Below, piece by piece: positions 6,250-28,394 of a DNA stretch of 64,000 nucleotides (positions are counted from its first letter, which is position 1; every line of letters starts with the position of its first letter). The notes beneath the pieces were generated by a model. The model was not told the DNA's origin, made no database searches, and saw only the letters and a program-made list of their open reading frames with translations. The stretch is taken from IMG/VR virus record IMGVR_UViG_3300022921_000002, positions 62,001 through 126,000 of that record; one strand, written 5' to 3'. A program made the position numbers and the translations under genes.

Positions 6250-6254
6250 GAAAC

Positions 6255-8381
6255 ATGGCTAGAGAATATTCCAAAGATACAGAAGCAATCATTCAAAGGC
6301 TTAGGGATGAAGGTGACCTGATCCGTAATAGTGGAACAAATTCATTAAAATCAGTCAGTTCAAAACTCGACAAGTTTGGTGATGTTTTCAAATCAATTAA
6401 CAATGGAATACAAGCTCAAAGCGTAATGCTAAAGCAAGCACAAGGTATTGCGGAAGAACAATACGAGTACACAAAAAGACAACAGGAATTTGATGATTTA
6501 AAATCAGAAAAGCTTTCTGATGATACTCGTAAGAATGCCGAAGCCCGTGACGCAAAATTAATTGACGGTGTTACAAAAGCATTTAACTTAGGTAACCTTA
6601 CCAAATTACTTGCAGGTGGTGCAGGACTTGCTGCCGCAGGCCTTATAGGTAAAGGGTTTATGGATGAAAGATTTCCTAATGCATTTGACGGTATCAAAGA
6701 TACAGTAGCGGACTTGCGAGGAACTATTGACGGTATGAACCAGGCAGCCGCTGAATTAACACGAACCGTTAATGAAATAAAAACAGATATTCAAAAATTT
6801 AAAGATGCTGTACCATGGGAAGCCCTTGCGATCACACTTGCAGGACTTGCCCTTCTTCCATCAAGAGCAGGTCGGTTTGGCTTTGGTCTTGCCGCAGGTG
6901 CTGCTACTGGTGCATATAAAGTATTTAAGGGTGCAAGGCAAGGTGATGCTGGTTTAGCACAAGCGAAGGCAATTAAAGAAGCACAAGAGCGAGCAGCGAA
7001 AGAAGCAGCAGAAGCAGCGGCAAAAGAAGCAGCAGAAGTTGCAGCAAAGCAAGCAGCGGAAGCGGCGGCTAAGAAAGCAGCTCAAACTGCTGCATCTGAT
7101 GATAAGTTAATTGCTATCGCGGCGGAGCAGGCAGCAAAAGTTGCAAGTGAAGAAGCAGCAGAAGCAGCGGCAAAACGTACGGCGGCAATCTCAGCATCAG
7201 TCGCATTGCAACAAGCAGCATATGCTGATGCCGCTGGTCCTAATAGATATAGAATTCAACCACCGTCATTACCTCACCCTGGCAAAATGTTTACAGCACC
7301 GGGTCAAATGCCCGCGCCTAATATTAATATTACAGAAACACCTTCTGGTTTTATTTATCAAGATATGGATAATAATAATAGGTTTATGCCAAGGGATGTG
7401 GCGCAACAACGATTATCAGCTGCAGGATTTGGACCTGACGGTTTACCAAATTATGGTAAGGCGCCTCGACAACCACGTGTCGGCCCAAGGGGTGGGGATG
7501 CTGGTTTAGCAGAGGCACGAAGAATGTTGCAAGTTGGAGAAAAGCAGGGTGCAGAACTTTTAGCAAATGCTGACCGAGGTTTGATGAAAAAAATGGTAGC
7601 ATCTGAAACCACTAAAATCGCGGTAAAATGGATTCCCGCTGTTGGTGCAGTTATAGGTCTTGGGTTTGTAGCATATAGTCTTATAATAGGAGATTATACA
7701 ACCGCCGGTTTAGAATCAGTCGGTGTGGCAATGCCTAGTATTACTGGTATTGCTGCTGATATCGCCGCAGCTACTACTTCAATATTTTTCCATGTTGGAG
7801 GAGTAGGTCCTTATAACCAATTCAACCCAGCACACCGTGCACTGTATATGGAAATTGCTGCGATGTTACGAGATTCAGTTGATAAGTATATGGAAGATAA
7901 AGCAAGGGCAAGAGCAGAACGAGCAGCACAACCTTCCCAATGGGAACTCTTAGCAAGAGAAGCAGAAATTAAAGGTGGCAATGCTCGTATTGCAAGTCAA
8001 GCAACTTATTATGAAAAAAATGAAAGTGGAGGATTTTTGGGATTGCGCCGTTATTCAGTATTTAATGCTGCAGGACAATTTGTTCGTTATTCACGTACAA
8101 AACCTGAAGGTACTACATCTATGGATGGTTTCCGTATTAATCAAGCAAGGAATACTAGTTACCCATCAGCACAGCGCCAAATGGCACGAGCACAAATGGT
8201 TGCAGCAGGTGCAATAGGCACAGGCGGACAATATAACATCCATATGGGTGATACCGTTAACGCCCCAATGAATTATACTGAAGGTTCTAAGTCACAGGCA
8301 AATGTTAGAATGAACGGTACAAGTCTGCACGGCGGTGCTACCGATGATCCGTTTAATAATTTGCCACCAGGTATTAACTAA
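6255..8381 (+). CDS. Tape-measure/baseplate hub-like protein (gp29 position)
   Basis: 708 aa, helical and Ala-rich, directly after gp26/gp51; hydrophobic Gly/Ala segments. Confidence 0.55.
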   Translation: MAREYSKDTEAIIQRLRDEGDLIRNSGTNSLKSVSSKLDKFGDVFKSINNGIQAQSVMLKQAQGIAEEQYEYTKRQQEFDDLKSEKLSDDTRKNAEARDAKLIDGVTKAFNLGNLTKLLAGGAGLAAAGLIGKGFMDERFPNAFDGIKDTVADLRGTIDGMNQAAAELTRTVNEIKTDIQKFKDAVPWEALAITLAGLALLPSRAGRFGFGLAAGAATGAYKVFKGARQGDAGLAQAKAIKEAQERAAKEAAEAAAKEAAEVAAKQAAEAAAKKAAQTAASDDKLIAIAAEQAAKVASEEAAEAAAKRTAAISASVALQQAAYADAAGPNRYRIQPPSLPHPGKMFTAPGQMPAPNINITETPSGFIYQDMDNNNRFMPRDVAQQRLSAAGFGPDGLPNYGKAPRQPRVGPRGGDAGLAEARRMLQVGEKQGAELLANADRGLMKKMVASETTKIAVKWIPAVGAVIGLGFVAYSLIIGDYTTAGLESVGVAMPSITGIAADIAAATTSIFFHVGGVGPYNQFNPAHRALYMEIAAMLRDSVDKYMEDKARARAERAAQPSQWELLAREAEIKGGNARIASQATYYEKNESGGFLGLRRYSVFNAAGQFVRYSRTKPEGTTSMDGFRINQARNTSYPSAQRQMARAQMVAAGAIGTGGQYNIHMGDTVNAPMNYTEGSKSQANVRMNGTSLHGGATDDPFNNLPPGIN
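6993..7177 (+). repeat. Imperfect coding repeats encoding (A)AKEAAEAA-type Ala/Lys/Glu helix
   Basis: gcagcgaaagaagcagcagaagcagcggcaaaagaagcagcagaa... translating to AAKEAAEAAAKEAAEVAAKQAAEAAAKKAA. Confidence 0.75.
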
Positions 8382-13821: not shown

Positions 13822-14005
13822 TTAGGTTCTCCTCAAGGTCTTTAAGCATATCATCAAAGTCATCGGCACAATTTTGACATAGCTTTAGGTGTAACGGTCC
13901 ATCCGCGGTATCAATGTCAACACTGTAAATGTCTTTCTTATTAACAGTGCTTTCACAATTAAAACAAGTGTGCATACCTATAAGTTTTTTAATCCATTCA
14001 CTCAT
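13796..14005 (-). CDS. Small zinc-finger protein
   Basis: CFNC...CQNC pair in 69 aa. Confidence 0.6.
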   Translation of the reverse strand: MSEWIKKLIGMHTCFNCESTVNKKDIYSVDIDTADGPLHLKLCQNCADDFDDMLKDLEENLNGQRNNTF

Positions 14006-14955
14006 TTGAAACTCGTTTCTATCATAATTTCGGTTAAGAATGCAACCATGTTAACTTCAAGGTCAGCAACAAAGTTGGCCTTATACATATAGTCAGCAAG
14101 TGTTACAACAAAACCTGGCATTGATCTCATTTCAATTTTATCGTTTGACATATCATAGATACGACGGAACATCTCATTCATATCCTGGTCACTGTTTTTA
14201 GCAACCCATTTACGCATATTGGTAAAATCTTTTGCTTTGAGTAATTCAAACAGTGCATCCATTGATTCTTGTTTAAGATTAATAAAAATACCTTCATCAA
14301 TTTTACCCGAAGCTGCATATGATTGCAATTCAGTTAAAACACGACGGAAGTCAGGAAAATGTTTTTGGATTACTTTTGCAACTACCGCTTTATCGTGAGC
14401 GACGTTTTCAGTTTCAAGAATTGCCTCTACTCGTTTCATAAATTGCATCGCAAGTTTAGGACGGTCACTGGTTTCAATACTGAAATCAACTTCTGATAAA
14501 CGAGAACGGAGTGGTGCAATGATACGGTTTTTGAAGTTACACGTAAAGATGAAACCACAATTGGATGAGAATTCCTCAATAAAATTACGGAGTGCGGGTT
14601 GCACGTTAGCAGCATTTAGGTAATCTGCTTCATCAAAGATAACATATTTACGGCCGCCTTGAAGTGATACCGCTGACGCATATGTTGAAATATCATAGCG
14701 GAGGGTATCAATGTTTACGTTCAATGATCCGTTCTTAACAATATAGTCACAACCCATTTCTTCGAGCATTGCTTTTGCAATTGTTGTTTTACCAACACCT
14801 GGTCCACCACTCAATAACAGATTAGGAATACTATCATCAGATACGAATTTTTTAAACATATCTTTAGTTTTTTGCGGAAGGATTGTGTCTTCGATAACCT
14901 GAGGTCTATATCGTTCAACCCACAATACTTCATTTGCTTTTGCATCTACAGCCAT
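14002..14955 (-). CDS. gp44: Clamp loader large subunit gp44
   Basis: LWVERYRP, Walker A GPGVGKT, DEAD, SRL, FPDFRR. Confidence 0.96.
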   Translation of the reverse strand: MAVDAKANEVLWVERYRPQVIEDTILPQKTKDMFKKFVSDDSIPNLLLSGGPGVGKTTIAKAMLEEMGCDYIVKNGSLNVNIDTLRYDISTYASAVSLQGGRKYVIFDEADYLNAANVQPALRNFIEEFSSNCGFIFTCNFKNRIIAPLRSRLSEVDFSIETSDRPKLAMQFMKRVEAILETENVAHDKAVVAKVIQKHFPDFRRVLTELQSYAASGKIDEGIFINLKQESMDALFELLKAKDFTNMRKWVAKNSDQDMNEMFRRIYDMSNDKIEMRSMPGFVVTLADYMYKANFVADLEVNMVAFLTEIMIETSFK

Positions 14956-15273: not shown

Positions 15274-15939
15274 TTAGGATCCTTTCTTATAAGTCGACTT
15301 TGTGTCAATTGCTACGTAATATGTAGCTTCATTACCTTTGAACTCAGAGATACCTTTACTTGAAAGCGTAACTTTGTAGTCCTGAGGTAGGAGTTTCAAA
15401 TTATCAGTCTTGATGATAATTTTGAATGTGTCGGGTGTTACACCGATTTCTACACCATAATCATCAGCTCTTTCGCTAGATGAGTCAATGGCTTTAAGAT
15501 AGCATTTGCCATCTTGTCCAACAAATGCAACTTCAGAGAACTGAAGCACACCTGCTGCTTTCACCACTGATTGGATATCTTCCCACGATACCGCCACTTC
15601 AACGTCAGCGTCTGTGATCTGAATTTCTTTCTCAGGTGGTGTATGAATCATAGAGATATCAGCAAACGCATAACGTGTGCGCTGTTTACCTTCTGTGATA
15701 ATAAAGTATTTATCATGGAATTCTACATCCGGATTTGAATGAAGTGACAAAATTGATAGAAATCTTGACAAATCATAGATACAAGCCTGTGATGGAATTT
15801 GATCTGGAATTGTTGCTGATGCAAGCAATGTTTTCTCAGGTGTGATTGTTTTCAATACACTACCTGGTTGCATCAAAATTGATTTATTAATAGTAGAGAA
15901 ACTCTTCAGAATAGTCAGAGTACGGTCAGAAAATTGCAT
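15274..15939 (-). CDS. gp45: Sliding clamp gp45
   Basis: MQFSDRTLTILKSFSTINKSI, IYDLSRFLS, NLKLLPQDYKV. Confidence 0.95.
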   Translation of the reverse strand: MQFSDRTLTILKSFSTINKSILMQPGSVLKTITPEKTLLASATIPDQIPSQACIYDLSRFLSILSLHSNPDVEFHDKYFIITEGKQRTRYAFADISMIHTPPEKEIQITDADVEVAVSWEDIQSVVKAAGVLQFSEVAFVGQDGKCYLKAIDSSSERADDYGVEIGVTPDTFKIIIKTDNLKLLPQDYKVTLSSKGISEFKGNEATYYVAIDTKSTYKKGS

Positions 15940-15962: not shown

Positions 15963-16856
15963 TTATCTGTTTATTTTATTACGCTTTTGCCTTTTTGTCA
16001 ATGGCTTTTTTGCTTTTTGAGATGTTTTATCAGCAGTTAGTGGTGCACCGAGTGAACCGATGTGTGCCATTGAACCTTTGAATACATATGCTCCAATATG
16101 TTGCAACTGCATCCATGGGCAAGTCCAAATTCTTAATCCAATATCACGTGCTTTACGGCAGAAGAAGTAATCTTCCGATAGATACCGTTTTGATACTGGG
16201 TCAATCATACAATCAAAGAATGCGTGGATCATTGTTTTACCATCAAAGTTTTCAGTACGAACATGGTCAGGTTTATAACTCATCTCAGGATATGCTTCTT
16301 TCCATTTAATAAGTGTTTCACGTGGGATGAGCATAAATCCTGTACCTGCTTCTGCAACCTCCATTGGTTCACCGACATTAAATGTTGCCTGTCCTTGAAC
16401 CGGGTTCATAACATAATCAGCAGTATAGTTTTCTAATTCAAACGGATCTTTATCAGCACGACCTTCTTTGGCAGCACGTGCTACCTTTTCCCAAGCAATT
16501 GTTTTCTTTGGGTAAGGACCTGTTACGATATTATAATTCTCAGGATCTGAAATGTTAACCGCAAGCATTGCAAGAATATCTTTTGCATTGAAACCAATAT
16601 CAGAATCAATAAAGACCATGTGGGTGCATTCTGACCTTAGGAATTCATCAACACAATAGTTACGTGCTCGCTGTACAAGGCTTTCATTAAACAAATAATA
16701 AAACTTTACGGTGATGCCATTTGCAGCACACATCATAGCCAAATCTGTTGAAGCCTTTGTATATGAGCCAGCACATTGGGCACCATACATCGGACTTGCT
16801 ATGAAGAGGGAAAACTTTCGTAATTCCTCAACTGTTACTTCTATTTTATTACTCAT
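15963..16856 (-). CDS. GT-A fold (GT2-like) glycosyltransferase
   Basis: ESLVQRARN, DxD motif FIDSD, GTGFMLI, YLSEDYFFC, H in LQHIG. Confidence 0.75.
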   Translation of the reverse strand: MSNKIEVTVEELRKFSLFIASPMYGAQCAGSYTKASTDLAMMCAANGITVKFYYLFNESLVQRARNYCVDEFLRSECTHMVFIDSDIGFNAKDILAMLAVNISDPENYNIVTGPYPKKTIAWEKVARAAKEGRADKDPFELENYTADYVMNPVQGQATFNVGEPMEVAEAGTGFMLIPRETLIKWKEAYPEMSYKPDHVRTENFDGKTMIHAFFDCMIDPVSKRYLSEDYFFCRKARDIGLRIWTCPWMQLQHIGAYVFKGSMAHIGSLGAPLTADKTSQKAKKPLTKRQKRNKINR

Positions 16857-17479
16857 ATCATCTCCATATCATTTTCAGCTCGATGGATTGCCTGCAAACG
16901 CATAACATCCGCAAGAATATCCCATGAGCTATCGTGTTCTTTAAAATTATTTTCCCACACTTCTGTACTATTGATTGGACAAAAACCATTGATCTTTGGG
17001 AAATCCAATTTTGCATCAATATAAGTACGTGTATCTCGTATTCTCCAAAACTTTAGGTATTCTTCCATGTGTAGAAGTTTGTTTTGTGATTTAAACAAAC
17101 GACCTAGAATAATAGGATCAAACGTATTTGATCTTGACCACCAATATGTAATGTTTGGTTGGCTAATCAAATAATCCATAAACTCTGAACAGAACATTTC
17201 AACAGTTAAATCATTGGGTGTTGGTTTGATATGCCTACGCACCTCAGGACCTAGTGACTCCCACCAATTAACTGTTGATGCATCAACTTCATATCCATAC
17301 TTTTTAACCTGATTAACAACATCAAGTTTAAACCGTTTTGCTTTTACAACATCGTTGAAGTTGTATGGCTCATCAAGAAACTTATCCCAATTGAATACCA
17401 TAACCGAACAGTCGATTACAGCACATTTATTAGCATCCTTTCCGAATGTTTCGAAGTCAATTATAAGATCGTTTCTCAC
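16853..17479 (-). CDS. dexA: DexA-like 3'-5' exonuclease (DEDD)
   Basis: IIDFET, WSRSNTFD, WRIRDTRT, HDSSWDILAD. Confidence 0.8.
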   Translation of the reverse strand: MRNDLIIDFETFGKDANKCAVIDCSVMVFNWDKFLDEPYNFNDVVKAKRFKLDVVNQVKKYGYEVDASTVNWWESLGPEVRRHIKPTPNDLTVEMFCSEFMDYLISQPNITYWWSRSNTFDPIILGRLFKSQNKLLHMEEYLKFWRIRDTRTYIDAKLDFPKINGFCPINSTEVWENNFKEHDSSWDILADVMRLQAIHRAENDMEMI

Positions 17480-18699
17480 GCAAAGAACTCCTCTAATGTA
17501 GGTTGATTACTTGTACCTCGGACATCCATTTCTGTCTTTTCAGTATGATTATTCTGACGCAAATAGTTTGTTTCAGACATAGGTAGTTCACCGTTAAGGA
17601 ATTTTGCAATCTGCAAGTGCATATCACGAGATGTTGGTACAGGAACATTTTGGGCAATGTGGTTCATAGAAGTCATTCCATTAAGCAACTCAAAATCATC
17701 AGGGAAACCCATCAAATACAATGCTTCACGGATTGTTAGTGAACGGTCATAGTGCGGATGTACTGTGTCTGCAAGGTTACGTCCAATAACAGCATTCATA
17801 CAATCATCAAACACATGGACTGATGCATCCCAAACGCCCAAACCTTGAGCAAACTTTTTGATGGCATGGTCAGTTACGTGTATCCCACGTGTATGTCCTG
17901 TCTCGTGCATCCATTTATTTGCCTCTTGAATTTTACCTGATTTGTTTACATATCCAAATGCCGTTGCCGCAATCTCACGGATAACTTGACGTGCTGTCAT
18001 ATTTGATCCTGGTGGTAGCATTGCTTCAACAAAATTATAATAAGGTTCATCCATTAGGTTTTTGTTTACAATCAAATCTTGGTGTAGTGCATCATCTTTG
18101 ACATCGTTTACATATTCATCAAATCTACGACGTGGGCGTTTATGCCAATCCATAATAGGTGCAGTTTCTGATTTCCAACCAATAGCAAAGGTACGGTCAC
18201 GTGCTTGTGGAATACCATGATATTTTGTTGATGTTTTATATAATGTCATACTATAACCTGCTTTGCTGCAAATGTCAAATAGTTTATCTGCTACAGGTCG
18301 ACCTTTATTAGTAAATAGTGCAGGAGCGTTTTCAACAATAATAGCTTTGGCTTCAAACCTATTAATACCTTCTTTAAAAACTTCGTACATCCATTCGTTC
18401 TTTTCACAACCTGCACCTTTTGCGTCAGGCGCTTTTGCAGTATTCAATTGTGACAATGCAGCACAAGGTGGTGTACCGCTGACAACATCAAGTGATCTTT
18501 TTGCGGCTTCAGGAATCATTGTATAGGCAATATCTCGACCTTTTGTTACATTCTGATAGTTAACATAGTGACTATCGTTTGCTCCAAAGTCAGGATAGGA
18601 ATAGATTGTTTCAGGTGGCTTGCCGAATGCTTTTTCCGCTCCTAGCATTTGACCGCCGATTAGTGGAATGATTGGAGCCCAGGTAATTTCTTTGTTCAT
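17476..18699 (-). CDS. C5-cytosine DNA methyltransferase-like protein with atypical motif I
   Basis: PPC (IV), VENAP (VI), PQARDR (VIII), LTIREALYLMGFPDDF (IX), IAQNVP (X); motif I reads IIPLIGG. Confidence 0.8.
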   Translation of the reverse strand: MNKEITWAPIIPLIGGQMLGAEKAFGKPPETIYSYPDFGANDSHYVNYQNVTKGRDIAYTMIPEAAKRSLDVVSGTPPCAALSQLNTAKAPDAKGAGCEKNEWMYEVFKEGINRFEAKAIIVENAPALFTNKGRPVADKLFDICSKAGYSMTLYKTSTKYHGIPQARDRTFAIGWKSETAPIMDWHKRPRRRFDEYVNDVKDDALHQDLIVNKNLMDEPYYNFVEAMLPPGSNMTARQVIREIAATAFGYVNKSGKIQEANKWMHETGHTRGIHVTDHAIKKFAQGLGVWDASVHVFDDCMNAVIGRNLADTVHPHYDRSLTIREALYLMGFPDDFELLNGMTSMNHIAQNVPVPTSRDMHLQIAKFLNGELPMSETNYLRQNNHTEKTEMDVRGTSNQPTLEEFFA

Positions 18700-18712: not shown

Positions 18713-19975
18713 TTAAAAAAATGCTTCGAGTGTTGCTGGTTTTTGAACTTCATATCCAGTTAAATCAGGTCTCTTATAGTTACTGTCAAATGCGGTGAAG
18801 ATTTTATCATTAATAAAACTACCATCATAATATTCAGGTTTAAGAACAGCTTTACGCAATTCGTAGATTGTTTGCTCATATGCCAATTTGTTATCAATAA
18901 GATATTGAAGATTTTTATGGAATTCTTCAGGTGTTTTTGGGCGCAAGATCTCAGGAATAGGTGTGTGACCTTGCATATCATATGACGGATGTAAGAATGG
19001 AATAACACCAGCATGGATCATTTCAATATACTTTGACGTTACCCAACCTTCTTTAATAGGAATGATAAATGTAAACTTAACATCCTGTAGTTTGTTCTGC
19101 AATTGTTTTAAATGCATTGATCCTTTAAAACGATTATCTCCTTTTGCATTATTACCCCATTTGCCATAGATCTCAACATCATCAAATTTGTCGAGTACCC
19201 ATTCCTTCAGGAGTTTATAACGTGATGGTTTGCCTTCATTAAGAACAACCATGAAGTCAGTGTTACGATTAGTATTTACTTCTTCTGTATATTCGTAATC
19301 AACACAGAATGCTGTTTCCATTGCAGCGTATTCACAGTTAACAGGAATGTCTTGCCGTGATTGATCTTCAATGCTTTTAATTGGATGAGCAGTATAGGTA
19401 TAGTCATATTGGCTCAAACCTTTAAACGGTAGGTGCATAAAGTCACGTGCTTGCCGCATTGTGTATCGAGGATCATTGATAACTTCAACATAATGTGGCT
19501 TACATTCATTTAGCCAAAAAGTCAACGGTGTAACATACCATTTTGTCATATCAAGAACAAATGCTGGTTTGCCATCATCGTTTTCTTCACGAACCTTTTT
19601 CATCTTTTCGGGAATACTTACGTTACCGATTTGACCTACCATCATTACCGTGGCATCAAGCGTGATATTATTTTCTTCAAAATATGTTTTAATCCACCAA
19701 AAATACCGATCAGTTGGTACTCTTTCAATTTTCATTTCTGCCCAAATATCAATAACATTATTATAAGGAAACAGATCTGCTTTATCCGTTTCAGTTAATG
19801 AAGCGAAGTCAGATCTTCCTACAATATAAAATATTTTATCAGGGTTGTTGTTTGCAATAGCACGAAGAACACAAGATGCCTCATTGTCACCACCGACAGG
19901 AGAATATTTGTTTGTCCTTAGCTTTACTGATTTACCAATTTTGGCAAAGGCAATATGTTTCATAATTAAGTCCAT
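18713..19975 (-). CDS. GT-B glycosyltransferase, T4 beta-glucosyltransferase-like (putative hmC sugar transferase)
   Basis: MKHIAFAKIG N-terminus, DVEIYGKW, KFTFIIP...TSKYIEMIHAGVIPFLHPSYD; next to sugar-activation genes. Confidence 0.6.
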   Translation of the reverse strand: MDLIMKHIAFAKIGKSVKLRTNKYSPVGGDNEASCVLRAIANNNPDKIFYIVGRSDFASLTETDKADLFPYNNVIDIWAEMKIERVPTDRYFWWIKTYFEENNITLDATVMMVGQIGNVSIPEKMKKVREENDDGKPAFVLDMTKWYVTPLTFWLNECKPHYVEVINDPRYTMRQARDFMHLPFKGLSQYDYTYTAHPIKSIEDQSRQDIPVNCEYAAMETAFCVDYEYTEEVNTNRNTDFMVVLNEGKPSRYKLLKEWVLDKFDDVEIYGKWGNNAKGDNRFKGSMHLKQLQNKLQDVKFTFIIPIKEGWVTSKYIEMIHAGVIPFLHPSYDMQGHTPIPEILRPKTPEEFHKNLQYLIDNKLAYEQTIYELRKAVLKPEYYDGSFINDKIFTAFDSNYKRPDLTGYEVQKPATLEAFF

Positions 19976-20328
19976 TCCATAGTTTTAACGAATTGCTCGG
20001 GAGTTATTGCTTTATCGTCAATATAGTAAACACCGTATGGTTTACCCCAAACAATTTCATCATAAGGAACGTCGTACTTTTTTAGCCAATCGACTGTAAT
20101 CTGTCCGACGTCTTCAATAATTTTATTTATGTCACCGCCATGAGTTAACATTCTGCGTGCTGTATGTAGCACAATCCGATAACCTTTTGACTTTGCCTTT
20201 TGCAGACTTTTAATCATAGGTTCATTTGGTAGAGCCATAGCATACTTCTGTTCTGATTCTTTTTGGTTATGTCTAGGGTAACATATAGTATCGTCTATGT
20301 CAACTACAATTGTTTCTTGCGTACTCAT
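19966..20328 (-). CDS. HAD-family phosphatase (capsule biosynthesis EcbF/BcbF-like)
   Basis: VVDIDDTI, LHTARRM, VPYDEIVWGKP, YYIDDKA. Confidence 0.85.
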   Translation of the reverse strand: MSTQETIVVDIDDTICYPRHNQKESEQKYAMALPNEPMIKSLQKAKSKGYRIVLHTARRMLTHGGDINKIIEDVGQITVDWLKKYDVPYDEIVWGKPYGVYYIDDKAITPEQFVKTMEWT

Positions 20329-21775
20329 TAATATAATCTCTCATTCTTTGTTGTCTGTCTTCGCAGTCATAATGAAGTTTAATACAAGTTGCGATTAACA
20401 GTGCACCGCCATCTATGATTTCGTCATAATCATTAGGAAAGTACTCTTTAATTAATTCAGAAAAACATTCCCGAACCGCTGTGGGGTATTTATGCCCCGT
20501 AACTAGTTCGTTATATCCATGATATAGGTCGTGTGACAATTTGCACATATCATAAAGGTAATCACCACCGATACCTATATAATCACCATAAGATCCTCGT
20601 GGATCCAATAATGTAAAAGCATCATTATATGGGTTATACAGAATGTTGCCAAAGTGCAAATCACCGTGCATAGCATCAACAGGTTTTGCCTTTTTCAGAC
20701 AGCGTTCCGCAACATTTCGGTAATACGGACTATCAGTTTCTAATCGTTCTTCTGTTTTATCAATCCACATCTTTTTTGCATTGTCAGGAAAATTGGCAGT
20801 AAACTCAAGAGTTGGCTTACGATGAAAATGGTTTGACATTGTAACTATAACTCTTTCAATCAAATACCGTATAGTACTTTTTGATATGTCCTCATGAGCA
20901 AATAGATCAGATAGCAGAATGCCTGACTCATAGGACATGGTCAGGGAATAATCATCTTTTAATACTTTAGGAATGAGCATGCTTTGAATAGGTGACAGTG
21001 ATGTATACCAATTCTTTTCATTCATAATAGTTCTTGTGGCAAAACTGTTATTTGCATTTGGAATCTTTGTAATCATATTGAGATCGGCATGATATTCAAA
21101 CGAATTAAACTCACGTGCCTTTAGTGTCAACAATGTAGCACAAGTTTTATGGTATGAGGCAATATCACCAATATCATACCACAATTCTGTACTTACGTTA
21201 TTAAAGTTACCATAATCTTCAAGTGCATCCGAGATATCATATCCTTTGCTATCACAAAAAGCAATGGATGCAGTTTGACCACACTTAAAGCTGTATAGAC
21301 CTACGAGTGCGGTTGCGTTATCAATGTTTTCTTTTGGTTTATTGTAATATTTTTCACCATCCCACATACACCAAGCAAAGTGATCTTCAACTTGTTTTGT
21401 TAAAAGGAAGTCTGTACCCAACGGCATATTTTCTTCAAGGATAATTGCGTCACCCAACCAAACAACAAGAGGACATTCCCAATTACCCAAATTTTCAATA
21501 CCAACAGCAATAGCGTCACGAGGTCCATTTAGTGATCCTTGTTTTACACATTTAATATTTTTATATTTTGATTTTTCAACCCAGTCACGAATATCATTAT
21601 GCTTACCATCAACAATAACGATCTGCCCAACTTGATCAGCATTCTTATAAATTGATTCAATAATATATTCAATAGTAGGTTTACCGTGGACACGGATCAT
21701 AGCCTTGCTACAATTTGCTGTTAGCGGTTTAAGGCGTGTTGCTTCTCCTGCCGCTGGTATCACTACATTTATCAT
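20300..21775 (-). CDS. Fused sugar nucleotidyltransferase plus APH/choline-kinase-like domain
   Basis: N-terminal IPAAGEATRL, WLGD, WYDIG; C-terminal HGDLHFGNIL, LDPRG. Confidence 0.8.
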   Translation of the reverse strand: MINVVIPAAGEATRLKPLTANCSKAMIRVHGKPTIEYIIESIYKNADQVGQIVIVDGKHNDIRDWVEKSKYKNIKCVKQGSLNGPRDAIAVGIENLGNWECPLVVWLGDAIILEENMPLGTDFLLTKQVEDHFAWCMWDGEKYYNKPKENIDNATALVGLYSFKCGQTASIAFCDSKGYDISDALEDYGNFNNVSTELWYDIGDIASYHKTCATLLTLKAREFNSFEYHADLNMITKIPNANNSFATRTIMNEKNWYTSLSPIQSMLIPKVLKDDYSLTMSYESGILLSDLFAHEDISKSTIRYLIERVIVTMSNHFHRKPTLEFTANFPDNAKKMWIDKTEERLETDSPYYRNVAERCLKKAKPVDAMHGDLHFGNILYNPYNDAFTLLDPRGSYGDYIGIGGDYLYDMCKLSHDLYHGYNELVTGHKYPTAVRECFSELIKEYFPNDYDEIIDGGALLIATCIKLHYDCEDRQQRMRDYINEYARNNCS

Positions 21776-22409
21776 AATTTAATCTCCACTCGTCGTATTC
21801 ATCTTCAAGGTTAACCCATTGTGGTTTACATAGACCTGACCAACTATGTCTCTTGTCCCAAACAAACCACGCATATGCAATCATACCACCAATCTGATGT
21901 TTCTTTTCAATCGGCTCAATAGAATCCTTTTTGAATTGAACTCGGTCCGATAAAAATATTATATCACTAGGAGGGTGGTTTGTAAACAACTTTTTTCGTT
22001 TTTTTCCTTCTAAAAAGGTTAAACGTAGAAACATTGCTACATAATCATATTCACCTATCCATTTTTCCGCCATCTTTCGTGGTAAGTCTTTATGATATGG
22101 TGGGTTTGTCACTACTCCATCAAAACCTGTTGGCTTTTGCAATTCCATTGCGTCATAAGAAGTATTTATGCTACATAAAGAATCGGAATATTCATTGAGA
22201 TCATAACTTAAAACATTGTGACCATTCCGCGCAAGCTCAACCGAAATGTTACCACGACCTGCGCATGGTTCAACTATATCTCTTGGTGGTTTACAATACT
22301 TTGTGAGAACGAATGTTGCAAGTGGAGGTGTTGGGTAAAAATCATTCGTTCTTCGGTTAGGGTCATCTTTCTTGACCCCAACATAGACATCGGTTAAACT
22401 ATTAGCCAA
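21729..22409 (-). CDS. N6-adenine (or N4-cytosine) DNA methyltransferase
   Basis: DFYPTP, EPCAGRGNI, VVTNPPY. Confidence 0.85.
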   Translation of the reverse strand: MANSLTDVYVGVKKDDPNRRTNDFYPTPPLATFVLTKYCKPPRDIVEPCAGRGNISVELARNGHNVLSYDLNEYSDSLCSINTSYDAMELQKPTGFDGVVTNPPYHKDLPRKMAEKWIGEYDYVAMFLRLTFLEGKKRKKLFTNHPPSDIIFLSDRVQFKKDSIEPIEKKHQIGGMIAYAWFVWDKRHSWSGLCKPQWVNLEDEYDEWRLNYDKCSDTSGRRSNTP

Positions 22410-22905
22410 GGTGTGTTACCAAAATACCTGCCTCTTTAAACATAGGCGCAGATTGCGTGGTCCATAAGTCAACCCATTTCTCGGGTGTGTTGTATGTTGC
22501 TTCGCGGATTACAACTCGGCGAATACCGGATTGAATAATAAGTTTAGTACAGTCAGGACACACTGGCAATCCGTGGACATATATTGTTGCATTCTTTAAT
22601 GAAACACCAGAATACAAAGCATTCATCAAAGCATTAGTTTCCGCATGGACAATCCGTGGGTATTTTTCATCTCGGTTTTCTAAACGCTCAATACTATCTT
22701 CAATACCTTTTGGAAAACCATTATAACCAGTAGCAAGAATACGTCGTTCGTCATTTACACAAACAGCACCAATCTGACTCGACGGATCTTTACTCCATTT
22801 AGAAATTGTTTCAGCCAATTCCATAAATCGCTTATCCCATTTGAGTTGACGTTCATCTTCCTCACGGTATTTTCGACTTATAAATCTATCATATGGTTCT
22901 TGCAT
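22402..22905 (-). CDS. cd: dCMP deaminase
   Basis: SKDPSSQIGA, GYNGFPKG, HAETNA, PVCPDC. Confidence 0.92.
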   Translation of the reverse strand: MQEPYDRFISRKYREEDERQLKWDKRFMELAETISKWSKDPSSQIGAVCVNDERRILATGYNGFPKGIEDSIERLENRDEKYPRIVHAETNALMNALYSGVSLKNATIYVHGLPVCPDCTKLIIQSGIRRVVIREATYNTPEKWVDLWTTQSAPMFKEAGILVTHLG

Positions 22906-24143
22906 TACATACCTCGAATAGCAATAGTTGAATTTAAACCACCAAACGCAAAGTTATTACTGATTGCAACATCAACCTTCTTTTCCTTTGCGGTATTTGG
23001 TACGACGTCAAGATCACATTCAGGATCAGGTTCTTCATAATTAATTGTTGGTGCAATAATGCCATCGTTTACTGCCATAATTGCCGCAAGTAATTCAACT
23101 GCACCTGTTCCGCCAATACAATGTCCGTGCATAGATTTGGTTGAACTTACACTCAATTTATGAGCATGGTCACCGAATGTTTGTTTGATAGCATCAATTT
23201 CAGTTCTATCATTTGGAACTGTGCCTGTACCATGAGCATTTATATAATCAACTTGTTCTGGGTTAATTGATGCATCTTTGAGGCATTTTTTCATTGATCT
23301 AATCAATCCTGAAACTTCAGGCATCACAAGATCACTTGAGTCTGCAGTACACGCCGCACCTAATACTTCACAGATGATATTTGCACCACGATTTTTAGCA
23401 TGCCAATATTCTTCAAAGACAAATACACCTGCGCCTTCACCGTGAACAATACCTTGACGCCCAAGAGAAAACGGTCGACAGTAACCTGGGCTTACAACGC
23501 GCAAACCTTCCCATGCTTTCATTCCTGATAGATTTAGAATTGCTTCTGAACCACCTGTCAGCATAACAGGAGCCATACCGTATTTAACCATATGGAATGC
23601 TTGTGTCATTGCGTGGTTAGCAGAAGCACATCCTGACGTTACAGTAAATGATGGACCTTTGATATTATGTTCCATTGAGATATGGCAAACAGGAGCATTA
23701 CCCATAACACGTGGAATAATAAAAGGATTAGCACGGCGTTTTGGATTATCAGATGCAAAGTAATTATGATATGTCCGTTCCCAGGTTTCAGCGCCACCAC
23801 TACCGTTACCCATAATAATACCTGCTTCCTCAGCAAGTTCACCATCAAATTCTAAACCTGATTGTTCTACTGCCTCGCGGGCTGCAAGTATATTGAGTTG
23901 TGTAAACCTATCAAAGATTGCAATTTGCATTCTTGTCCAATGGTCTTTTTCATCATAGCCTTTAATTTGGCCACCACGAGTGTAGCGCATATTTTGAATT
24001 TCTATGATGTTTTGGAGTTCGCTAATGCCGTCGGTGCCTTCGGCCATTGCTTTCATTGTATCTTGGGCAGTCCATCCTAAAGAATTTATAGTGCCCATGC
24101 CTGTAATAACAACACGGTTAGTCTGTCTTGTTGAGCTCATCAA
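22905..24143 (-). CDS. fabF: Beta-ketoacyl-ACP synthase II, FabF/NodE-like
   Basis: RVVITGMG; catalytic Cys in TSGCASANHA; His in INAHGTGT and KSMHGH; NNFAFGG; KAWEGLRV segment typical of NodE-like paralogues. Confidence 0.93.
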   Translation of the reverse strand: MMSSTRQTNRVVITGMGTINSLGWTAQDTMKAMAEGTDGISELQNIIEIQNMRYTRGGQIKGYDEKDHWTRMQIAIFDRFTQLNILAAREAVEQSGLEFDGELAEEAGIIMGNGSGGAETWERTYHNYFASDNPKRRANPFIIPRVMGNAPVCHISMEHNIKGPSFTVTSGCASANHAMTQAFHMVKYGMAPVMLTGGSEAILNLSGMKAWEGLRVVSPGYCRPFSLGRQGIVHGEGAGVFVFEEYWHAKNRGANIICEVLGAACTADSSDLVMPEVSGLIRSMKKCLKDASINPEQVDYINAHGTGTVPNDRTEIDAIKQTFGDHAHKLSVSSTKSMHGHCIGGTGAVELLAAIMAVNDGIIAPTINYEEPDPECDLDVVPNTAKEKKVDVAISNNFAFGGLNSTIAIRGM

Positions 24144-24818: not shown

Positions 24819-25517
24819 TTATACAACAAGATCAAAATGACGTTCGTATACGTGCAAGTTCATCACTTGCCATGTCAGCATGCCTTTTTCAATAGTAAAG
24901 TGTTTATTACCAGGAAGCTCACAACGGCTGTTCCATCGAGTAACAAGTTGATCCATTAGGTATTGAGCCCATGCGTAATCATTCTTGTAACCAAATACAA
25001 CATCATTAGAACGCATTTGCGATACCATATGTAGAATACCATCACGGATATAGAATGTTTGAGCGTTGGTACAAATGAAATCAGACTTACCGTTTTCATC
25101 AAACTCAACCCAGATAGATGGACGATTGTAAACCATTTGAGCACGACGGCTGTCAGGATTACGCCACAGTTCATCAAAAGCATTTTCAAATTGATTGAAA
25201 TACTTTGGTGAATTTACAAGGTGACCGTAGTTTGAATTGATTTCACCGTTTGGATCAGCAGCATATTGCCATGCCGCAGGTGGTTCTTTAGATGGTCCGT
25301 AAATATCATTAATATTTGTTGAACCTGATTTGTACCATTCCAATTCTGATTCAATATAACTTTGACTTGGTTTACCAAAGATTGCTGGTTCAGTTGCAAG
25401 AAAGTTTGCACCGATTAATTCAATAGTACGTTGGCCTGTTTTATCAATAGTGAATGCTTCATCTTTAAGCTCACCTTTGAAAAACTCACGGATATCATAT
25501 ACGCTATCAATTCTCAT
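24819..25517 (-). CDS. gp42: dCMP hydroxymethylase (T4 gp42 family)
   Basis: DKTGQRTIELIGANF, ELEWY, GEINSNYG, NPDSRR, DFICT, MRSNDVVFGYKNDYAW (Asp at the dCMP-specificity position), LHVYERHF. Confidence 0.93.
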   Translation of the reverse strand: MRIDSVYDIREFFKGELKDEAFTIDKTGQRTIELIGANFLATEPAIFGKPSQSYIESELEWYKSGSTNINDIYGPSKEPPAAWQYAADPNGEINSNYGHLVNSPKYFNQFENAFDELWRNPDSRRAQMVYNRPSIWVEFDENGKSDFICTNAQTFYIRDGILHMVSQMRSNDVVFGYKNDYAWAQYLMDQLVTRWNSRCELPGNKHFTIEKGMLTWQVMNLHVYERHFDLVV

Positions 25518-28292: not shown

Positions 28293-28394
28293 ATGAAACT
28301 AAAGTATAGAATCAAGTTCTTTATGTCTAAATTAAAGTTTTGGAAAAAAGGAAGTTACGGTAAAGGTACGTTCATCTACGAAGATGATGATTAG
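28293..28394 (+). CDS. 33-aa basic peptide with acidic tail
   Basis: MKLKYRIKFFMSKLKFWKKGSYGKGTFIYEDDD; strong SD GGAGGAG; upstream AATAAATA late-like box. Confidence 0.55.
   Translation: MKLKYRIKFFMSKLKFWKKGSYGKGTFIYEDDD

What the first reader, a model, noticed from the sequence alone, without database searches (positions are those of the whole stretch)
17476..18699. C5-methyltransferase homologue with a broken SAM-binding motif in an hmC phage
Seen: catalytic motifs PC, ENxP and QxRxR and motifs IX and X are intact, but motif I reads IIPLIGG instead of FxGxGG, and motif X reads AQNVP instead of GNxVP. The gene directly follows the BGT-like gene. Known: C5-MTases form a covalent C6 adduct and, without SAM, can add or remove hydroxymethyl groups or couple nucleophiles to hmC in vitro. 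A conventional 5mC writer is redundant if C is already replaced by hmC. Inference: it may be repurposed as a DNA-level hmC editing or coupling enzyme.
Basis: partly seen in the sequence, partly recalled or inferred. Interest (0 to 1): 0.6.

Follow-up and report, generated by a model that had tools for sequence, protein, structure and literature searches.

The report
Clamp-tethered methyltransferase-like enzyme in hmC phages
A marine T4-like phage that replaces cytosine with hydroxymethylcytosine encodes a DNA cytosine-methyltransferase look-alike that keeps its catalytic residues, has a rebuilt cofactor pocket and carries the DNA polymerase's clamp-binding tail, so it probably performs an as yet unknown chemical step on the modified cytosines of newly copied phage DNA.

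Summary
Window 17476-18699(-) encodes a 407-aa protein with a confident C5-MTase fold (Z 25 to M.HaeIII). Cys79, Glu123, Arg167 and Arg169 are invariant. The AdoMet-site residues are replaced in a conserved way: PLIGG instead of FxGxGG (Leu in 136 of 138 relatives), no fixed motif II acid, and xQNVP instead of GNxVP.

Three new points:
1. The family is large (269 clusters at E<1e-30). Nearly every sufficiently complete genome carrying it also has an Asp-type (dCMP-specific) thymidylate-synthase homologue, usually with a BGT-fold glycosyltransferase and sugar-nucleotide genes. This includes cultured phages XG4, S-TIM5 and Bacillus phage G.
2. In this genome only three ORFs end in TLExFF: the gp43 polymerase, this protein and the adjacent BGT-fold glycosyltransferase. 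The tails covary with the polymerase tail across lineages, so they are probably gp45 clamp-binding peptides (complex prediction: weak support, 0.59 vs 0.01).
3. There is no TET gene. gp42 is T4-type, and a PRA-PH candidate dCTPase is present.

Best reading: a replisome-tethered, post-replicative enzyme of the cytosine-hypermodification module that acts on 5-substituted cytosine without ordinary SAM methyl transfer. The chemistry is untested. A divergent but ordinary 5mC writer is not excluded.

The parts
17476..18699 (-). MTL: 407-aa C5-cytosine-methyltransferase-fold protein with a re-lined cofactor site (the finding)
   Evidence: ORF; Pfam PF00145 partial; AF2 pLDDT 93.8; Z 25.2 to M.HaeIII
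18652..18672 (-). Motif I variant IIPLIGG (residues 10-16), in place of FxGxGG
   Evidence: Leu13 in 136/138, Gly15 and Gly16 invariant
18463..18468 (-). Catalytic Pro78-Cys79 (motif IV, TPPCAALS)
   Evidence: Cys invariant in 143/143 aligned representatives
18322..18333 (-). Motif VI ENAP (Glu123 invariant)
18193..18207 (-). Motif VIII QARDR (Arg167 and Arg169 invariant)
17641..17655 (-). Motif X variant AQNVP (Gln350 replaces the Asn of GN)
   Evidence: Gln in 146/149
17479..17499 (-). C-terminal tail TLEEFFA, a putative gp45 clamp-binding peptide
   Evidence: one of only 3 such ORF ends in the 221-kb genome; matches the gp43 tail NTLEDFFG; covaries across lineages; complex prediction weak support, 0.59 vs 0.01
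18713..19975 (-). GT420: 420-aa GT-B glycosyltransferase, best structural match T4 beta-glucosyltransferase; constant upstream partner of MTL
   Evidence: no Pfam; model pLDDT 86.3; Foldseek top hits 1j39/1qkj/1c3j; synteny
18716..18736 (-). C-terminal tail ATLEAFF of GT420, the same putative clamp-binding peptide
19966..20328 (-). HAD-family phosphatase (capsule-biosynthesis phosphatase type), sugar-activation cassette
   Evidence: counterpart of DLP3 gp81 / RB69 gp51 in PMC13326640
20300..21775 (-). Sugar-1-phosphate nucleotidyltransferase fused to a kinase-like domain (NDP-sugar synthesis)
   Evidence: same architecture as DLP3 gp82 / RB69 gp52:53
22402..22905 (-). dCMP deaminase
   Evidence: conserved in the module
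24819..25517 (-). gp42 orthologue: dCMP-specific thymidylate-synthase homologue (predicted dCMP hydroxymethylase)
   Evidence: E 1e-61 to T4 gp42, NDYAW Asp kept; 47-50% identical to T4-type
16853..17479 (-). DEDD 3'-5' exonuclease (Rv2179c-like); its start overlaps the MTL stop codon; conserved downstream neighbour
15963..16856 (-). p297: conserved ORF, possibly a GT-A (Anp1-like) glycosyltransferase (lead only)
   Evidence: phrog_1574; weak HpsN hit; Atlas feature neighbours named Anp1 / nucleotide-diphospho-sugar transferase
15274..15939 (-). gp45 sliding clamp, the proposed docking partner of the tails
   Evidence: Pfam gp45-slide_C 1e-15; 32% identical to T4 gp45, E 7e-25
14002..14955 (-). 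gp44 clamp-loader large subunit

Best explanation
MTL is a replisome-tethered, post-replicative enzyme of the phage's cytosine-hypermodification module.

Shown:
- It has the complete C5-cytosine-methyltransferase fold.
- It keeps every residue needed to flip a cytosine out of the helix and add Cys79 to C6 (Cys79, Glu123, Arg167, Arg169, motifs IX and X backbone).
- The residues that line the AdoMet site in canonical enzymes are replaced by a different set that is itself strongly conserved.
- It ends in the same peptide as the phage's gp43 DNA polymerase, and so does the BGT-fold glycosyltransferase encoded directly upstream.
- The family occurs almost only in viral genomes that make a C5-modified dCMP with an Asp-type thymidylate-synthase homologue.

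Inferred:
- The tail docks the enzyme on the gp45 sliding clamp, so it scans newly made phage DNA together with the glycosyltransferase.
- Its substrate is the 5-substituted cytosine (hmC or glycosyl-hmC), not plain cytosine. The C5 substituent of a flipped base points into the former AdoMet site, which would explain why that site was rebuilt.
- Cys79 adds to C6. The most likely outcome is chemistry at the 5-methylene carbon: loss of the oxygen substituent to give an exocyclic methylene intermediate, then capture by another nucleophile. This has been seen in vitro with SAM-free C5-MTases. The product and any co-substrate are unknown.
For: - Fold: AF2 pLDDT 93.8. M.HaeIII Z 25.2, rmsd 2.8 over 272 residues, model residues 5-368. 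Foldseek top hits M.HaeIII, DNMT1, M.HhaI.
- Catalytic residues are invariant and cofactor residues are replaced in a conserved way. The family profile aligns to solved C5-MTases only over motifs IV-VIII and IX-X. Motif I mapping by hhalign.
- Family size: 2003 hits at E<1e-3 and 269 at E<1e-30 among 50%-identity representatives.
- Tail: only MTL, GT420 and gp43 end in TLExFF among 647 ORFs. T4 gp43 ends ASLDFLFG, while T4 alpha- and beta-GT lack such a tail.
- Within-genome matches in G001-G003, L090 and L091, and in L147, L151, L158-165, L170-175. The strict tail occurs in 10/130 diverse representatives against a chance rate of about 8e-5.
- gp45 plus tail complex prediction: weak support, score 0.59, best control 0.01, partner pLDDT at least 42, runs agree in at least 90% of contacts. 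The mark was reached by 58 of 80 solved complexes and 2 of 110 mismatched pairs, but at 0.60 or under by only 7 of those 80 and by both mismatches that passed.
- Invariant synteny GT420-MTL-exonuclease-p297-gp45-gp44 with gp42 upstream in about 35 long loci. The same module is found around a subclade roughly 35% identical.
- Asp-type TS homologues in XG4, S-TIM5, phage G and 13/19 large contigs, often 1-6 kb from MTL. gp42-like genes occur in only 1408 of 50,697 isolate phage records.
- No TET/JBP gene.
- Precedents: T4 alpha-GT binds gp45 (PMC13216743). C5-MTases form covalent complexes with 5hmC and 5OHC DNA and dehydroxymethylate 5hmC without SAM (PMC11347137).
Against: - No biochemical or DNA-composition data exist for any carrier.
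- I could not open the model's coordinates, so whether Leu13 and its neighbours really close the AdoMet site is not shown.
- An Asp after strand 3 (the adenine-N6 contact in canonical enzymes) is kept in 102/141 relatives, so an adenosine-containing cofactor, even SAM in an unusual pose, remains possible for the family.
- Pfam still calls it DNA_methylase at 78 bits.
- Some distant members are long fusions, one with a CXXC zinc finger, which is typical of ordinary eukaryotic-type DNA methyltransferases.
- XG4 and S-TIM5 homologues lack the polymerase-like tail.
- The clamp-binding prediction is only weak support.
- Completeness of C-to-hmC replacement is unknown: the candidate dCTPase rests on a 40-bit PRA-PH hit, and T4 gp56, MazG and dUTPase_2 searches were negative.
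- Co-occurrence with Asp-type TS would also be expected for an enzyme that mops up residual unmodified C.
Confidence: 0.45

Rival explanations
1. MTL is an ordinary SAM-dependent 5-methylcytosine writer with an unusually divergent motif I/II/X. It methylates cytosines that escape replacement, or particular sites, as anti-restriction protection.
For: Complete fold and all catalytic motifs. Pfam DNA_methylase at 78 bits. Terminal GG of motif I kept, and Asp after strand 3 in 102/141 relatives. A CXXC-fused distant member. Phage C5-MTases are common anti-restriction genes (PMC8256090).
Against: Leu replaces the first Gly of FxGxG in 136/138. There is no Phe and no fixed ribose-binding acid, and GN becomes xQ; all of these are conserved rather than drifting. 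The family profile cannot be aligned to motifs I-III of any solved C5-MTase. It falls below the NCBIfam dcm cut-off. Near-obligate co-occurrence with dCMP-type TS homologues, whose product cannot be C5-methylated, is not expected of a generic anti-restriction methylase.
Confidence: 0.22
2. MTL is a DNA-level mop-up enzyme. It converts the few unmodified cytosines left in nascent DNA into hmC (or another 5-substituted C) using a one-carbon donor other than SAM, such as formaldehyde or methylene-tetrahydrofolate, so that no plain C remains.
For: Clamp tethering suits scanning all new DNA. Co-occurrence with pre-replicative C replacement. Re-lined cofactor site. C5-MTases add aldehydes to C in vitro (established literature, recalled; related chemistry in PMC11347137).
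Against: No folate-related gene in the module. No known natural example. A candidate dCTPase already limits C incorporation.
Confidence: 0.12
3. MTL is a non-catalytic base-flipping or adaptor protein that holds modified cytosines out of the helix, or recruits the glycosyltransferase to the clamp, without doing chemistry itself.
For: Loss of canonical cofactor motifs. Constant pairing with GT420. Both carry the tail.
Against: Absolute invariance of Cys79, Glu123, Arg167 and Arg169 over 150 representatives down to about 32% identity is hard to explain without catalysis. GT420 has its own tail, and T4 BGT flips its own substrate (established knowledge).
Confidence: 0.1
4. MTL acts on RNA (DNMT2-like tRNA methylation) or on host DNA rather than on phage DNA.
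For: DNMT2 shares the fold (Z 19-20).
Against: Polymerase-type clamp tail, position inside the replication module and linkage to DNA-modification genes. Cofactor motifs that DNMT2 retains are lost here.
Confidence: 0.03

Closest known systems
Bacterial and phage DNA (cytosine-5) methyltransferases (M.HaeIII, M.HhaI, E. coli Dcm; Pfam PF00145)
   Same: Same two-domain fold (Z 24-25). Same catalytic Pro-Cys, ENx Glu and QxRxR arginines, and motif IX.
   Different: Motif I is PLIGG, not FxGxGG. There is no fixed motif II acid. PCQ becomes PCA, ENV becomes ENAP, and GN becomes xQ. It carries a polymerase-like C-terminal tail and lives in genomes whose cytosine is already C5-substituted.
DNA cytosine C5-carboxymethyltransferase with Cx-SAM (PDB 8yf3)
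   Same: A natural C5-MTase-fold enzyme that departs from plain methyl transfer. It is among the structural matches.
   Different: It still binds a SAM derivative in a canonical pocket. Here the pocket-lining motifs themselves are replaced.
SAM-free side reactions of C5-MTases on 5hmC (dehydroxymethylation, coupling of thiols/selenols; covalent complexes with 5hmC and 5OHC DNA)
   Same: This is the chemistry proposed for MTL: Cys addition at C6 activates the 5-substituent (PMC11347137; earlier work recalled from memory).
   Different: Those are slow in vitro side reactions of SAM-dependent enzymes. MTL would be a natural enzyme built for such chemistry, which is unproven.
T4 alpha-glucosyltransferase binding to the gp45 clamp
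   Same: A post-replicative hmC-modifying enzyme associated with the sliding clamp (PMC13216743 and Sommer 2004).
   Different: T4 alpha-GT has no polymerase-type C-terminal tail. Here a BGT-fold GT and an MTase-fold protein both carry the polymerase's own tail.
Phage C5-MT / TET / glycosyltransferase pathway (Burke et al. 2021, PMC8256090)
   Same: A C5-MTase-family gene clustered with DNA glycosyltransferases for cytosine hypermodification.
   Different: That pathway makes 5hmC in DNA from 5mC and needs a TET. This genome has no TET and makes hmC as a nucleotide with gp42.
DNMT1-PCNA tethering in eukaryotes (own knowledge)
   Same: A cytosine-C5 methyltransferase recruited to the replication clamp by a short peptide.
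   Different: Different peptide and position (an internal PIP box versus a C-terminal gp43-like tail), different clamp, and DNMT1 is a genuine SAM enzyme.
Thymidine hypermodification (5-hmdU kinase plus aGPT-Pplase)
   Same: Post-replicative substitution at the 5-hydroxymethyl carbon of a pyrimidine in phage DNA (PMC11472151, listed).
   Different: There the hydroxyl is activated by phosphorylation. Here activation would come from covalent catalysis at C6, and there is no kinase of that family in the module.

Membership tests
SAM-dependent DNA (cytosine-5) methyltransferase (PF00145 / TIGR00675) | Two-domain C5-MTase fold | tested here: met
   AF2 pLDDT 93.8; Z 25.2 to 1dct, Z 24 to M.HhaI
SAM-dependent DNA (cytosine-5) methyltransferase (PF00145 / TIGR00675) | Catalytic motif IV Pro-Cys, motif VI Glu, motif VIII Arg-x-Arg | tested here: met
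   Cys79, Glu123, Arg167 and Arg169 invariant in 143-151 aligned representatives
SAM-dependent DNA (cytosine-5) methyltransferase (PF00145 / TIGR00675) | Motif I FxGxGG (AdoMet loop) | tested here: not met
   IIPLIGG; Leu at the first Gly in 136/138; never Phe at the Phe position. Pfam alignment starts at profile position 36
SAM-dependent DNA (cytosine-5) methyltransferase (PF00145 / TIGR00675) | Motif II acidic residue at the end of strand 2 (ribose hydroxyls) and motif X Gly-Asn | tested here: not met
   Position 36 is P/S/D/K/E/T/G; GN is replaced by x-Gln in 146/149
SAM-dependent DNA (cytosine-5) methyltransferase (PF00145 / TIGR00675) | Curated family score cut-offs | tested here: inconclusive
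   Pfam 78.4 bits, above the 22-bit cut-off but a partial match. NCBIfam dcm 62.9 bits, below the 100.65 cut-off
SAM-dependent DNA (cytosine-5) methyltransferase (PF00145 / TIGR00675) | Binds AdoMet and forms 5-methylcytosine | not testable with these tools
Clients of the T4-type gp45 sliding clamp (gp43-like C-terminal clamp-binding peptide) | Extreme C-terminal peptide resembling that of the cognate DNA polymerase | tested here: met
   MTL TLEEFFA, GT420 ATLEAFF, gp43 NTLEDFFG; the only three among 647 ORFs. T4 gp43 ends ASLDFLFG
Clients of the T4-type gp45 sliding clamp (gp43-like C-terminal clamp-binding peptide) | Tail covaries with the polymerase tail in other genomes | tested here: met
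   G001-G003, L090, L091; L147, L151, L158-165, L170-175, and a separate ...S(L/I)(F/I) type in about 17 loci. XG4 and S-TIM5 lack it
Clients of the T4-type gp45 sliding clamp (gp43-like C-terminal clamp-binding peptide) | Physical binding to gp45 | tested here: inconclusive
   Complex prediction gives weak support: 0.59 vs best control 0.01. No experiment
T-even-type cytosine hypermodification module (dCMP-type TS homologue plus DNA glycosyltransferase) | TS homologue with Asp at the E. coli ThyA Asn177 position | tested here: met
   Window gp42 NDYAW. Same in relatives, XG4, S-TIM5, phage G and 13/19 large contigs
T-even-type cytosine hypermodification module (dCMP-type TS homologue plus DNA glycosyltransferase) | DNA glycosyltransferase and NDP-sugar supply genes | tested here: met
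   GT420 best matches T4 BGT. Nucleotidyltransferase-kinase fusion and HAD phosphatase; epimerase/dehydratase in the distant clade
T-even-type cytosine hypermodification module (dCMP-type TS homologue plus DNA glycosyltransferase) | Modified cytosine actually present in virion DNA | not testable with these tools
   Needs LC-MS of nucleosides
Phage C5-MT / TET / GT pathway | TET/JBP dioxygenase in the genome | tested here: not met
   No PF12851 match at E<=0.1 in the complete 221-kb record

The most novel reading that the evidence does not exclude
MTL is the first natural SAM-independent enzyme of the C5-methyltransferase fold. Riding the sliding clamp, it adds Cys79 to C6 of hydroxymethylcytosine (or its glycoside) in nascent DNA, expels the oxygen substituent to form an exocyclic methylene intermediate and captures a new nucleophile bound in the former AdoMet site. 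This would create a still undescribed hypermodified cytosine that is widespread in marine phages.
Probability: 0.27. Interest if true: 0.92.

Novelty: new variant of a known kind. Interest (0 to 1): 0.76.

Why it matters
If the reading is right, it shows a second route besides phosphorylation for activating a 5-hydroxymethyl pyrimidine in DNA. It would also be a natural counterpart of the SAM-free C5-MTase chemistry so far known only as an in vitro curiosity, and possibly a new DNA base in abundant marine phages.

Independently of the chemistry, polymerase-type clamp-binding tails on two DNA-modifying enzymes give a simple, testable picture of how hypermodification is coupled to the replication fork.

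The family is large, and three cultured phages carry members (Pseudoalteromonas phage XG4, cyanophage S-TIM5, Bacillus phage G), so the question is directly testable. Enzymes that derivatise hmC site-selectively would also be useful tools for epigenetic sequencing.

If MTL instead proves to be a normal 5mC writer, it would redefine which motif I/II/X residues are needed for AdoMet binding.

Tried and rejected
- **MT-TET route:** rejected. No TET/JBP gene in the complete genome.
- **RB69-type 5-hydroxy-dCMP synthase instead of gp42:** rejected for this window. The TS homologue is 47-50% identical to T4-type hydroxymethylases and about 26% to Mosigvirus-type enzymes (PMC13326640).
- **T4 gp56 by tblastn, MazG and dUTPase_2 profiles:** no hit. 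PRA-PH gave a 40-bit hit next to gp43.
- **Sequence similarity of GT420 to T4 alpha- or beta-GT:** none. The fold search was needed.
- **p297 against the GT2 of the distant clade:** no similarity.
- **The search for related loci with the diverse alignment A2:** failed, no conserved stretch. I used A1 and a subclade alignment A4 instead.
- **Whole-record TS search for metagenome contigs L090-L092:** records not held.
- **Source names for distant or fused members:** none available.
- **Literature:** nothing found on a clamp-tethered phage C5-MTase, on this family, or on S-TIM5 DNA modification.
- **Upstream ORFs at 26-40 kb:** scanned for a donor-synthesis pathway. Only generic enzymes turned up, with no evident link.
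- **Pocket analysis of the AF2 model:** not possible, because coordinates are not exposed to the script box.
- **gp45 plus tail complex job:** returned 'weak support' only. I do not treat it as proof of binding.
Full report
**What is at the coordinates.** Window 17476-18699 (minus strand) is a clean 407-aa ORF in a 221,447-bp, CheckV-complete virus record. The window is bases 62001-126000 of that record. The ORF sits in a minus-strand operon-like row:
- gp44 clamp loader (14002-14955)
- gp45 sliding clamp (15274-15939)
- a 297-aa ORF of unknown function
- a DEDD exonuclease whose start overlaps the target's stop codon
- the target, called MTL here
- a 420-aa ORF 13 nt upstream (GT420)
- a HAD phosphatase
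- a sugar-1-phosphate nucleotidyltransferase fused to a kinase-like domain
- an NPPY-type methyltransferase-like ORF
- dCMP deaminase
- a beta-ketoacyl synthase
- a thymidylate-synthase homologue

Pfam DNA_methylase matches at E 8.7e-22, but only from profile position 36, so motif I is left out. NCBIfam's dcm model scores 62.9 bits against a cut-off of 100.65. The translation shows TPPCAALS, ENAP, QARDR and RSLTIREALYLMGFPDDF, which are canonical catalytic and DNA-side motifs. It shows IIPLIGG and AQNVP where FxGxGG and GNxVP are expected. A profile-profile alignment against tool-derived canonical enzymes (E. coli Dcm, a Nostoc phage MTase, Bacillus phage G gp301; 99.8% probability) puts Dcm FIDLFAGIGG opposite WAPIIPLIGG. 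HMMER puts IAQNVP opposite IGNAVP.

The AlphaFold model is confident (pLDDT 93.8, pTM 0.92). It superposes on M.HaeIII with Z 25.2 (rmsd 2.8 A, 272 residues, model residues 5-368), and on M.HhaI and DNMT1 with Z about 24 (Foldseek). The Rossmann cofactor subdomain therefore exists as a fold. What differs is its lining.

**The deviations are selected, not decayed.** An exhaustive HMMER search of 1.84 billion representatives gives 2003 hits at E<1e-3 and 269 at E<1e-30. The word-indexed search gives more than 610 proteins. I aligned 150 representatives, down to about 32% identity:

| Position | Residues found |
|---|---|
| First Gly of FxGxG | Leu in 136/138 |
| Residue before it | Pro in 132/138 |
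| Phe position of FxGxG | Ile/Val/Gln/Met, never Phe |
| Terminal Gly-Gly | invariant |
| End of strand 2 (ribose-binding acid in canonical enzymes) | P/S/D/K/E/T/G |
| PCQ | PC(A/S) |
| ENV | ENAP in 147-148/151 |
| GN of motif X | x-Gln in 146/149 |
| Cys79, Glu123, Arg167, Arg169 | invariant |

New conserved residues appear in helix B (Asn41 in 132/142, Asp42 or Glu in 134/142). The family profile aligns to solved C5-MTases only over motifs IV-VIII and IX-X.

One caveat: an Asp after strand 3, the motif III position that contacts adenine N6 in canonical enzymes, is present in 102/141 relatives. This window's subclade has Pro there.

**Is this an hmC phage?** The TS homologue at 24819-25517 matches T4 dCMP hydroxymethylase at E 1e-61 and keeps the specificity Asp (NDYAW). 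This matters because RB69-type 'gp42' proteins are now known to make 5-hydroxy-dCMP (PMC13326640). The window's protein is 47-50% identical to T4-type enzymes and only about 26% to Mosigvirus-type ones, so hydroxymethylation is the better prediction.

There is no TET/JBP gene. T4 gp56, MazG and dUTPase_2 searches were negative. A PRA-PH domain ORF lies immediately downstream of gp43; PRA-PH is the domain that the MetaGPA study found co-occurring with thymidylate-synthase homologues on cytosine-modified contigs (PMC8670742). The DNA itself has not been analysed, so 'hmC phage' remains an inference.

**The neighbour.** GT420 has no Pfam, PHROG or NCBIfam hit and no BLASTP similarity to T4 alpha- or beta-GT. 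Its model (pLDDT 86.3) finds T4 beta-glucosyltransferase entries as its six best PDB matches (E about 1e-7), ahead of generic GT-B enzymes.

The nucleotidyltransferase-kinase fusion and the small HAD phosphatase have the same architecture as the NDP-arabinose supply genes of DLP3 and RB69. No sugar isomerase was sought, and the sugar is unknown.

The 297-aa ORF resembles Anp1-like/GT-A clusters by language-model features only. That is a lead, not a result.

**New finding 1: a shared polymerase-type tail.** The family alignment showed a conserved C-terminal TLEEFF(A), and GT420 ends ATLEAFF. A scan of all 647 ORFs of at least 60 aa in the genome found exactly three ending in L-[ED]-x-F-F: MTL, GT420 and an 844-aa ORF outside the window. 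That ORF is the gp43 family-B DNA polymerase (E 1e-122 to RB69 and T4 polymerases), and it ends NTLEDFFG.

T4 gp43 ends ASLDFLFG. From established knowledge, this is the peptide that docks the polymerase on the gp45 clamp. T4 alpha-GT and beta-GT have no such end.

The tails covary within genomes:

| Genome or loci | PolB tail | MTL tail | GT tail |
|---|---|---|---|
| G001 | DTLESFFM | ATLEEFFA | STLEDFFA |
| G003 | ASLESFFM | ATLEGFFV | TTLADFFV |
| L091 | STLEDFFS | NSLEEFFE | - |
| L090 | ADLTDLFG | STLEEAFQ | - |
| L158/161/162/165 | (S/T)LEDFFV | QLD(E/A)FMV | - |
| L170/175 | NT(I/V)(E/D)xFF | DTLEAFI | IGLESFF (L175) |
| L147 | ASLEDFFGQV | ASLEDFT | - |
| about 17 loci (L105-L141) | IYTTSLF | KYKVKS(I/T)(I/F) | - |

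In L091 an adjacent second MTL paralogue has no tail.

The strict tail occurs in 10/130 full-length diverse representatives, against a per-position chance of about 8e-5. XG4 and S-TIM5 homologues lack it.

A complex prediction of gp45 with MTL residues 372-407 gave 'weak support': score 0.59, best of three controls 0.01, partner pLDDT at least 42, runs agreeing in at least 90% of contacts. The mark was reached by 58 of 80 solved complexes and 2 of 110 mismatched pairs, but at 0.60 or under by only 7 of those 80 and by both mismatches that passed.

There is a precedent for clamp association of an hmC-modifying enzyme: T4 alpha-GT, but not beta-GT, co-purifies with gp45 (PMC13216743, citing Sommer 2004). 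I regard clamp tethering as likely (about 0.75) on the comparative evidence. It is not proven.

**New finding 2: the family tracks pre-replicative cytosine replacement.**
- *Window's lineage.* In 80 viral-contig loci 62-100% identical, every locus long enough shows GT420-MTL-exonuclease-p297-gp45-gp44-gp62, with dCMP deaminase and a gp42 homologue upstream. The sugar-activation genes between them are swapped in some sublineages.
- *Isolates.* Among 50,697 isolate phage records, only XG4 (46% identical) and the S-TIM5 group (30%) carry full-length homologues. XG4 has a gp42-like gene 4.6 kb upstream and a GT420 homologue. S-TIM5's annotated ThyA reads GVPLDMFRY where E. coli ThyA has GLPFNIASY, so it has Asp at the Asn177 specificity position.
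- *Distant subclade (about 35% identical to MTL).* It has more than 464 relatives in viral contigs. Of 19 large records searched whole, 14 have a TS-family gene. Thirteen of these have a divergent copy with Asp at that position, often 1-6 kb from MTL. All three records that are at least 90% complete are positive. The five negatives and the one with only a canonical Asn-type ThyA are 15-26% complete fragments.
- *Its neighbourhood repeats the module.* Among 52 loci: sugar epimerase/dehydratase directly upstream in 30, TS homologue in 26, GT420 homologue in 24, dCMP deaminase in 18 and a GT2 in 14, all amid PolB, UvsX and gp41.
- *Other distant members.* They also sit beside clamp loader, clamp, gp32 and PolB.
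- *Bacillus phage G.* Its gp301 is a still more distant relative (FIFGGS, NCPCSGLS, ENAP), and the phage has a second, Asp-type TS homologue about 13 kb away.
- *Baseline.* gp42-like genes occur in 1408 of 50,697 isolate records, and only six of those records carry MTL. MTL appears contingent on the Asp-type TS, not the reverse.

**Interpretation.** A base already substituted at C5 cannot accept a methyl group there. A generic anti-restriction methylase would have no reason to be confined to such genomes. In ternary complexes of canonical enzymes, the C5 substituent of the flipped base points at the cofactor (established structural knowledge). An enzyme that must accommodate hmC or glycosyl-hmC in the catalytic pocket therefore has to vacate or rebuild exactly the residues that are changed here.

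Invariance of the nucleophile Cys and its helpers argues for covalent catalysis rather than mere binding. C5-MTases do form covalent complexes with 5hmC and 5OHC DNA and dehydroxymethylate 5hmC without SAM (PMC11347137).

I therefore favour a clamp-tethered, SAM-independent (or non-SAM cofactor) enzyme acting on the 5-substituted cytosine of nascent DNA, most plausibly through an exocyclic methylene intermediate that is captured by another nucleophile.
- *Shown:* fold, motif states, conservation, synteny, co-occurrence, tail identity and covariation.
- *Inferred:* clamp binding, substrate, chemistry, product.

**Rivals.**
- *An ordinary SAM methylase with odd motifs (0.22).* This is kept alive by the surviving motif III Asp, the terminal GG and a distant member fused to a CXXC zinc finger.
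- *A DNA-level mop-up hydroxymethylase for residual C (0.12).* It explains the co-occurrence and the tethering equally well, but it lacks any donor-pathway signal.
- *A non-catalytic adaptor (0.10).* It fits poorly with the invariant catalytic residues.
- *An RNA or host-DNA role (0.03).* It fits poorly with the tail and the context.

**Novelty.** The papers I searched and read describe phage C5-MT/TET/GT pathways, T-even glucosylation, arabinosyl-5-hydroxycytosine, hmC carbamoylation and thymidine hypermodification. None describes this family, its cofactor-site signature, its link to Asp-type TS genes or the shared clamp tail (searches found nothing).

It is a new variant of a known kind (the C5-MTase fold) with a plausible new function. 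The library lacks most subscription-journal papers, so prior description cannot be excluded.

**Limits.** Co-occurrence counts are not phylogenetically independent, and most contigs are fragments.

Noticed in passing
L084 (cyanophage S-TIM5, JQ245707.2) 5757-6593; TS ORF also in L086: The gene annotated ThyA has Asp at the E. coli ThyA Asn177 specificity position (GVPLDMFRY against GLPFNIASY). This predicts a dCMP-modifying enzyme and therefore modified cytosine in S-TIM5 DNA. I found no report of this in the library.
   Followed up: partly
L202 (Bacillus phage G, JN638751.1 about 233481-234188) and L200 (gp301): Phage G has a second, Asp-type TS homologue (TPYDIY) besides a canonical ThyA, about 13 kb from gp301. 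gp301 is a distant MTL-like protein (FIFGGS, NCPCSGLS, ENAP).
   Followed up: partly
window 21729-22409 (-): A 226-aa NPPY-type (N6-adenine or N4-cytosine) methyltransferase-like ORF overlaps the end of the nucleotidyltransferase-kinase gene. In related loci it was detected only where that gene is also present, and it is missing in the sublineages with a different sugar cassette.
   Followed up: no
window 22905-24143 (-): A full-length beta-ketoacyl-ACP synthase (KAS) gene sits between dCMP deaminase and gp42. It is found only in the closest relatives (L005-L012) and is absent from the other lineages.
   Followed up: no
window 28372-31344 (-): A run of small tailoring-type genes: sulfotransferase-like, GNAT acetyltransferase, Asp/Asn beta-hydroxylase-like cupin, Methyltransf_12 and a weak PP-loop/QueC-like ORF. 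Their function and any link to DNA modification are unknown.
   Followed up: no
window 35111-37415 (-): Two adjacent radical-SAM enzymes, one with a SPASM domain.
   Followed up: no
G000:C1:137463-137648 (outside the window; L100): A PRA-PH/MazG-type ORF immediately downstream of gp43 is the candidate dCTPase of this phage.
   Followed up: partly
L085 (Pseudoalteromonas phage XG4) MTL 5414-6568 and the upstream GT420 homologue: XG4's MTL and GT420 homologues both lack the polymerase-like tail, but they end in similar acidic stretches (…NEKVEDRG and …NEKEDINI). XG4 PolB ends ASLDDLFM. This may be a different shared docking peptide, or chance.
   Followed up: no
L091 10001-11206 and 11415-12668: Two tandem MTL paralogues. 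Only the first carries the polymerase-like tail (NSLEEFFE against PolB STLEDFFS). PIG-L deacetylase and WbqC-like genes lie directly upstream, and ThyX is nearby.
   Followed up: no
Proteins P0202 (598 aa), P0157 (1462 aa), P0163 (768 aa), P0206 (653 aa): These distant family members are long fusions. P0202 carries a C-terminal zf-CXXC domain. They share a PLIGGSxxGC motif I variant and come from short contigs, possibly eukaryotic or giant-virus.
   Followed up: partly
L030, L048-L054, L056-L082 (relatives of the window): Relatives carry two gp42 variants (70-100% and 41-47% identical to the window's), both Asp-type. Some replace the nucleotidyltransferase-kinase/HAD cassette with other genes while keeping GT420-MTL. 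The base-synthesis and sugar-supply parts seem to be exchanged as modules.
   Followed up: partly
window 15963-16856 (-): The conserved 297-aa ORF between the exonuclease and gp45 (phrog_1574) contains an FIDSDIGF stretch, and its language-model neighbours are named Anp1 / nucleotide-diphospho-sugar transferase. It may be a second, GT-A type DNA glycosyltransferase.
   Followed up: partly
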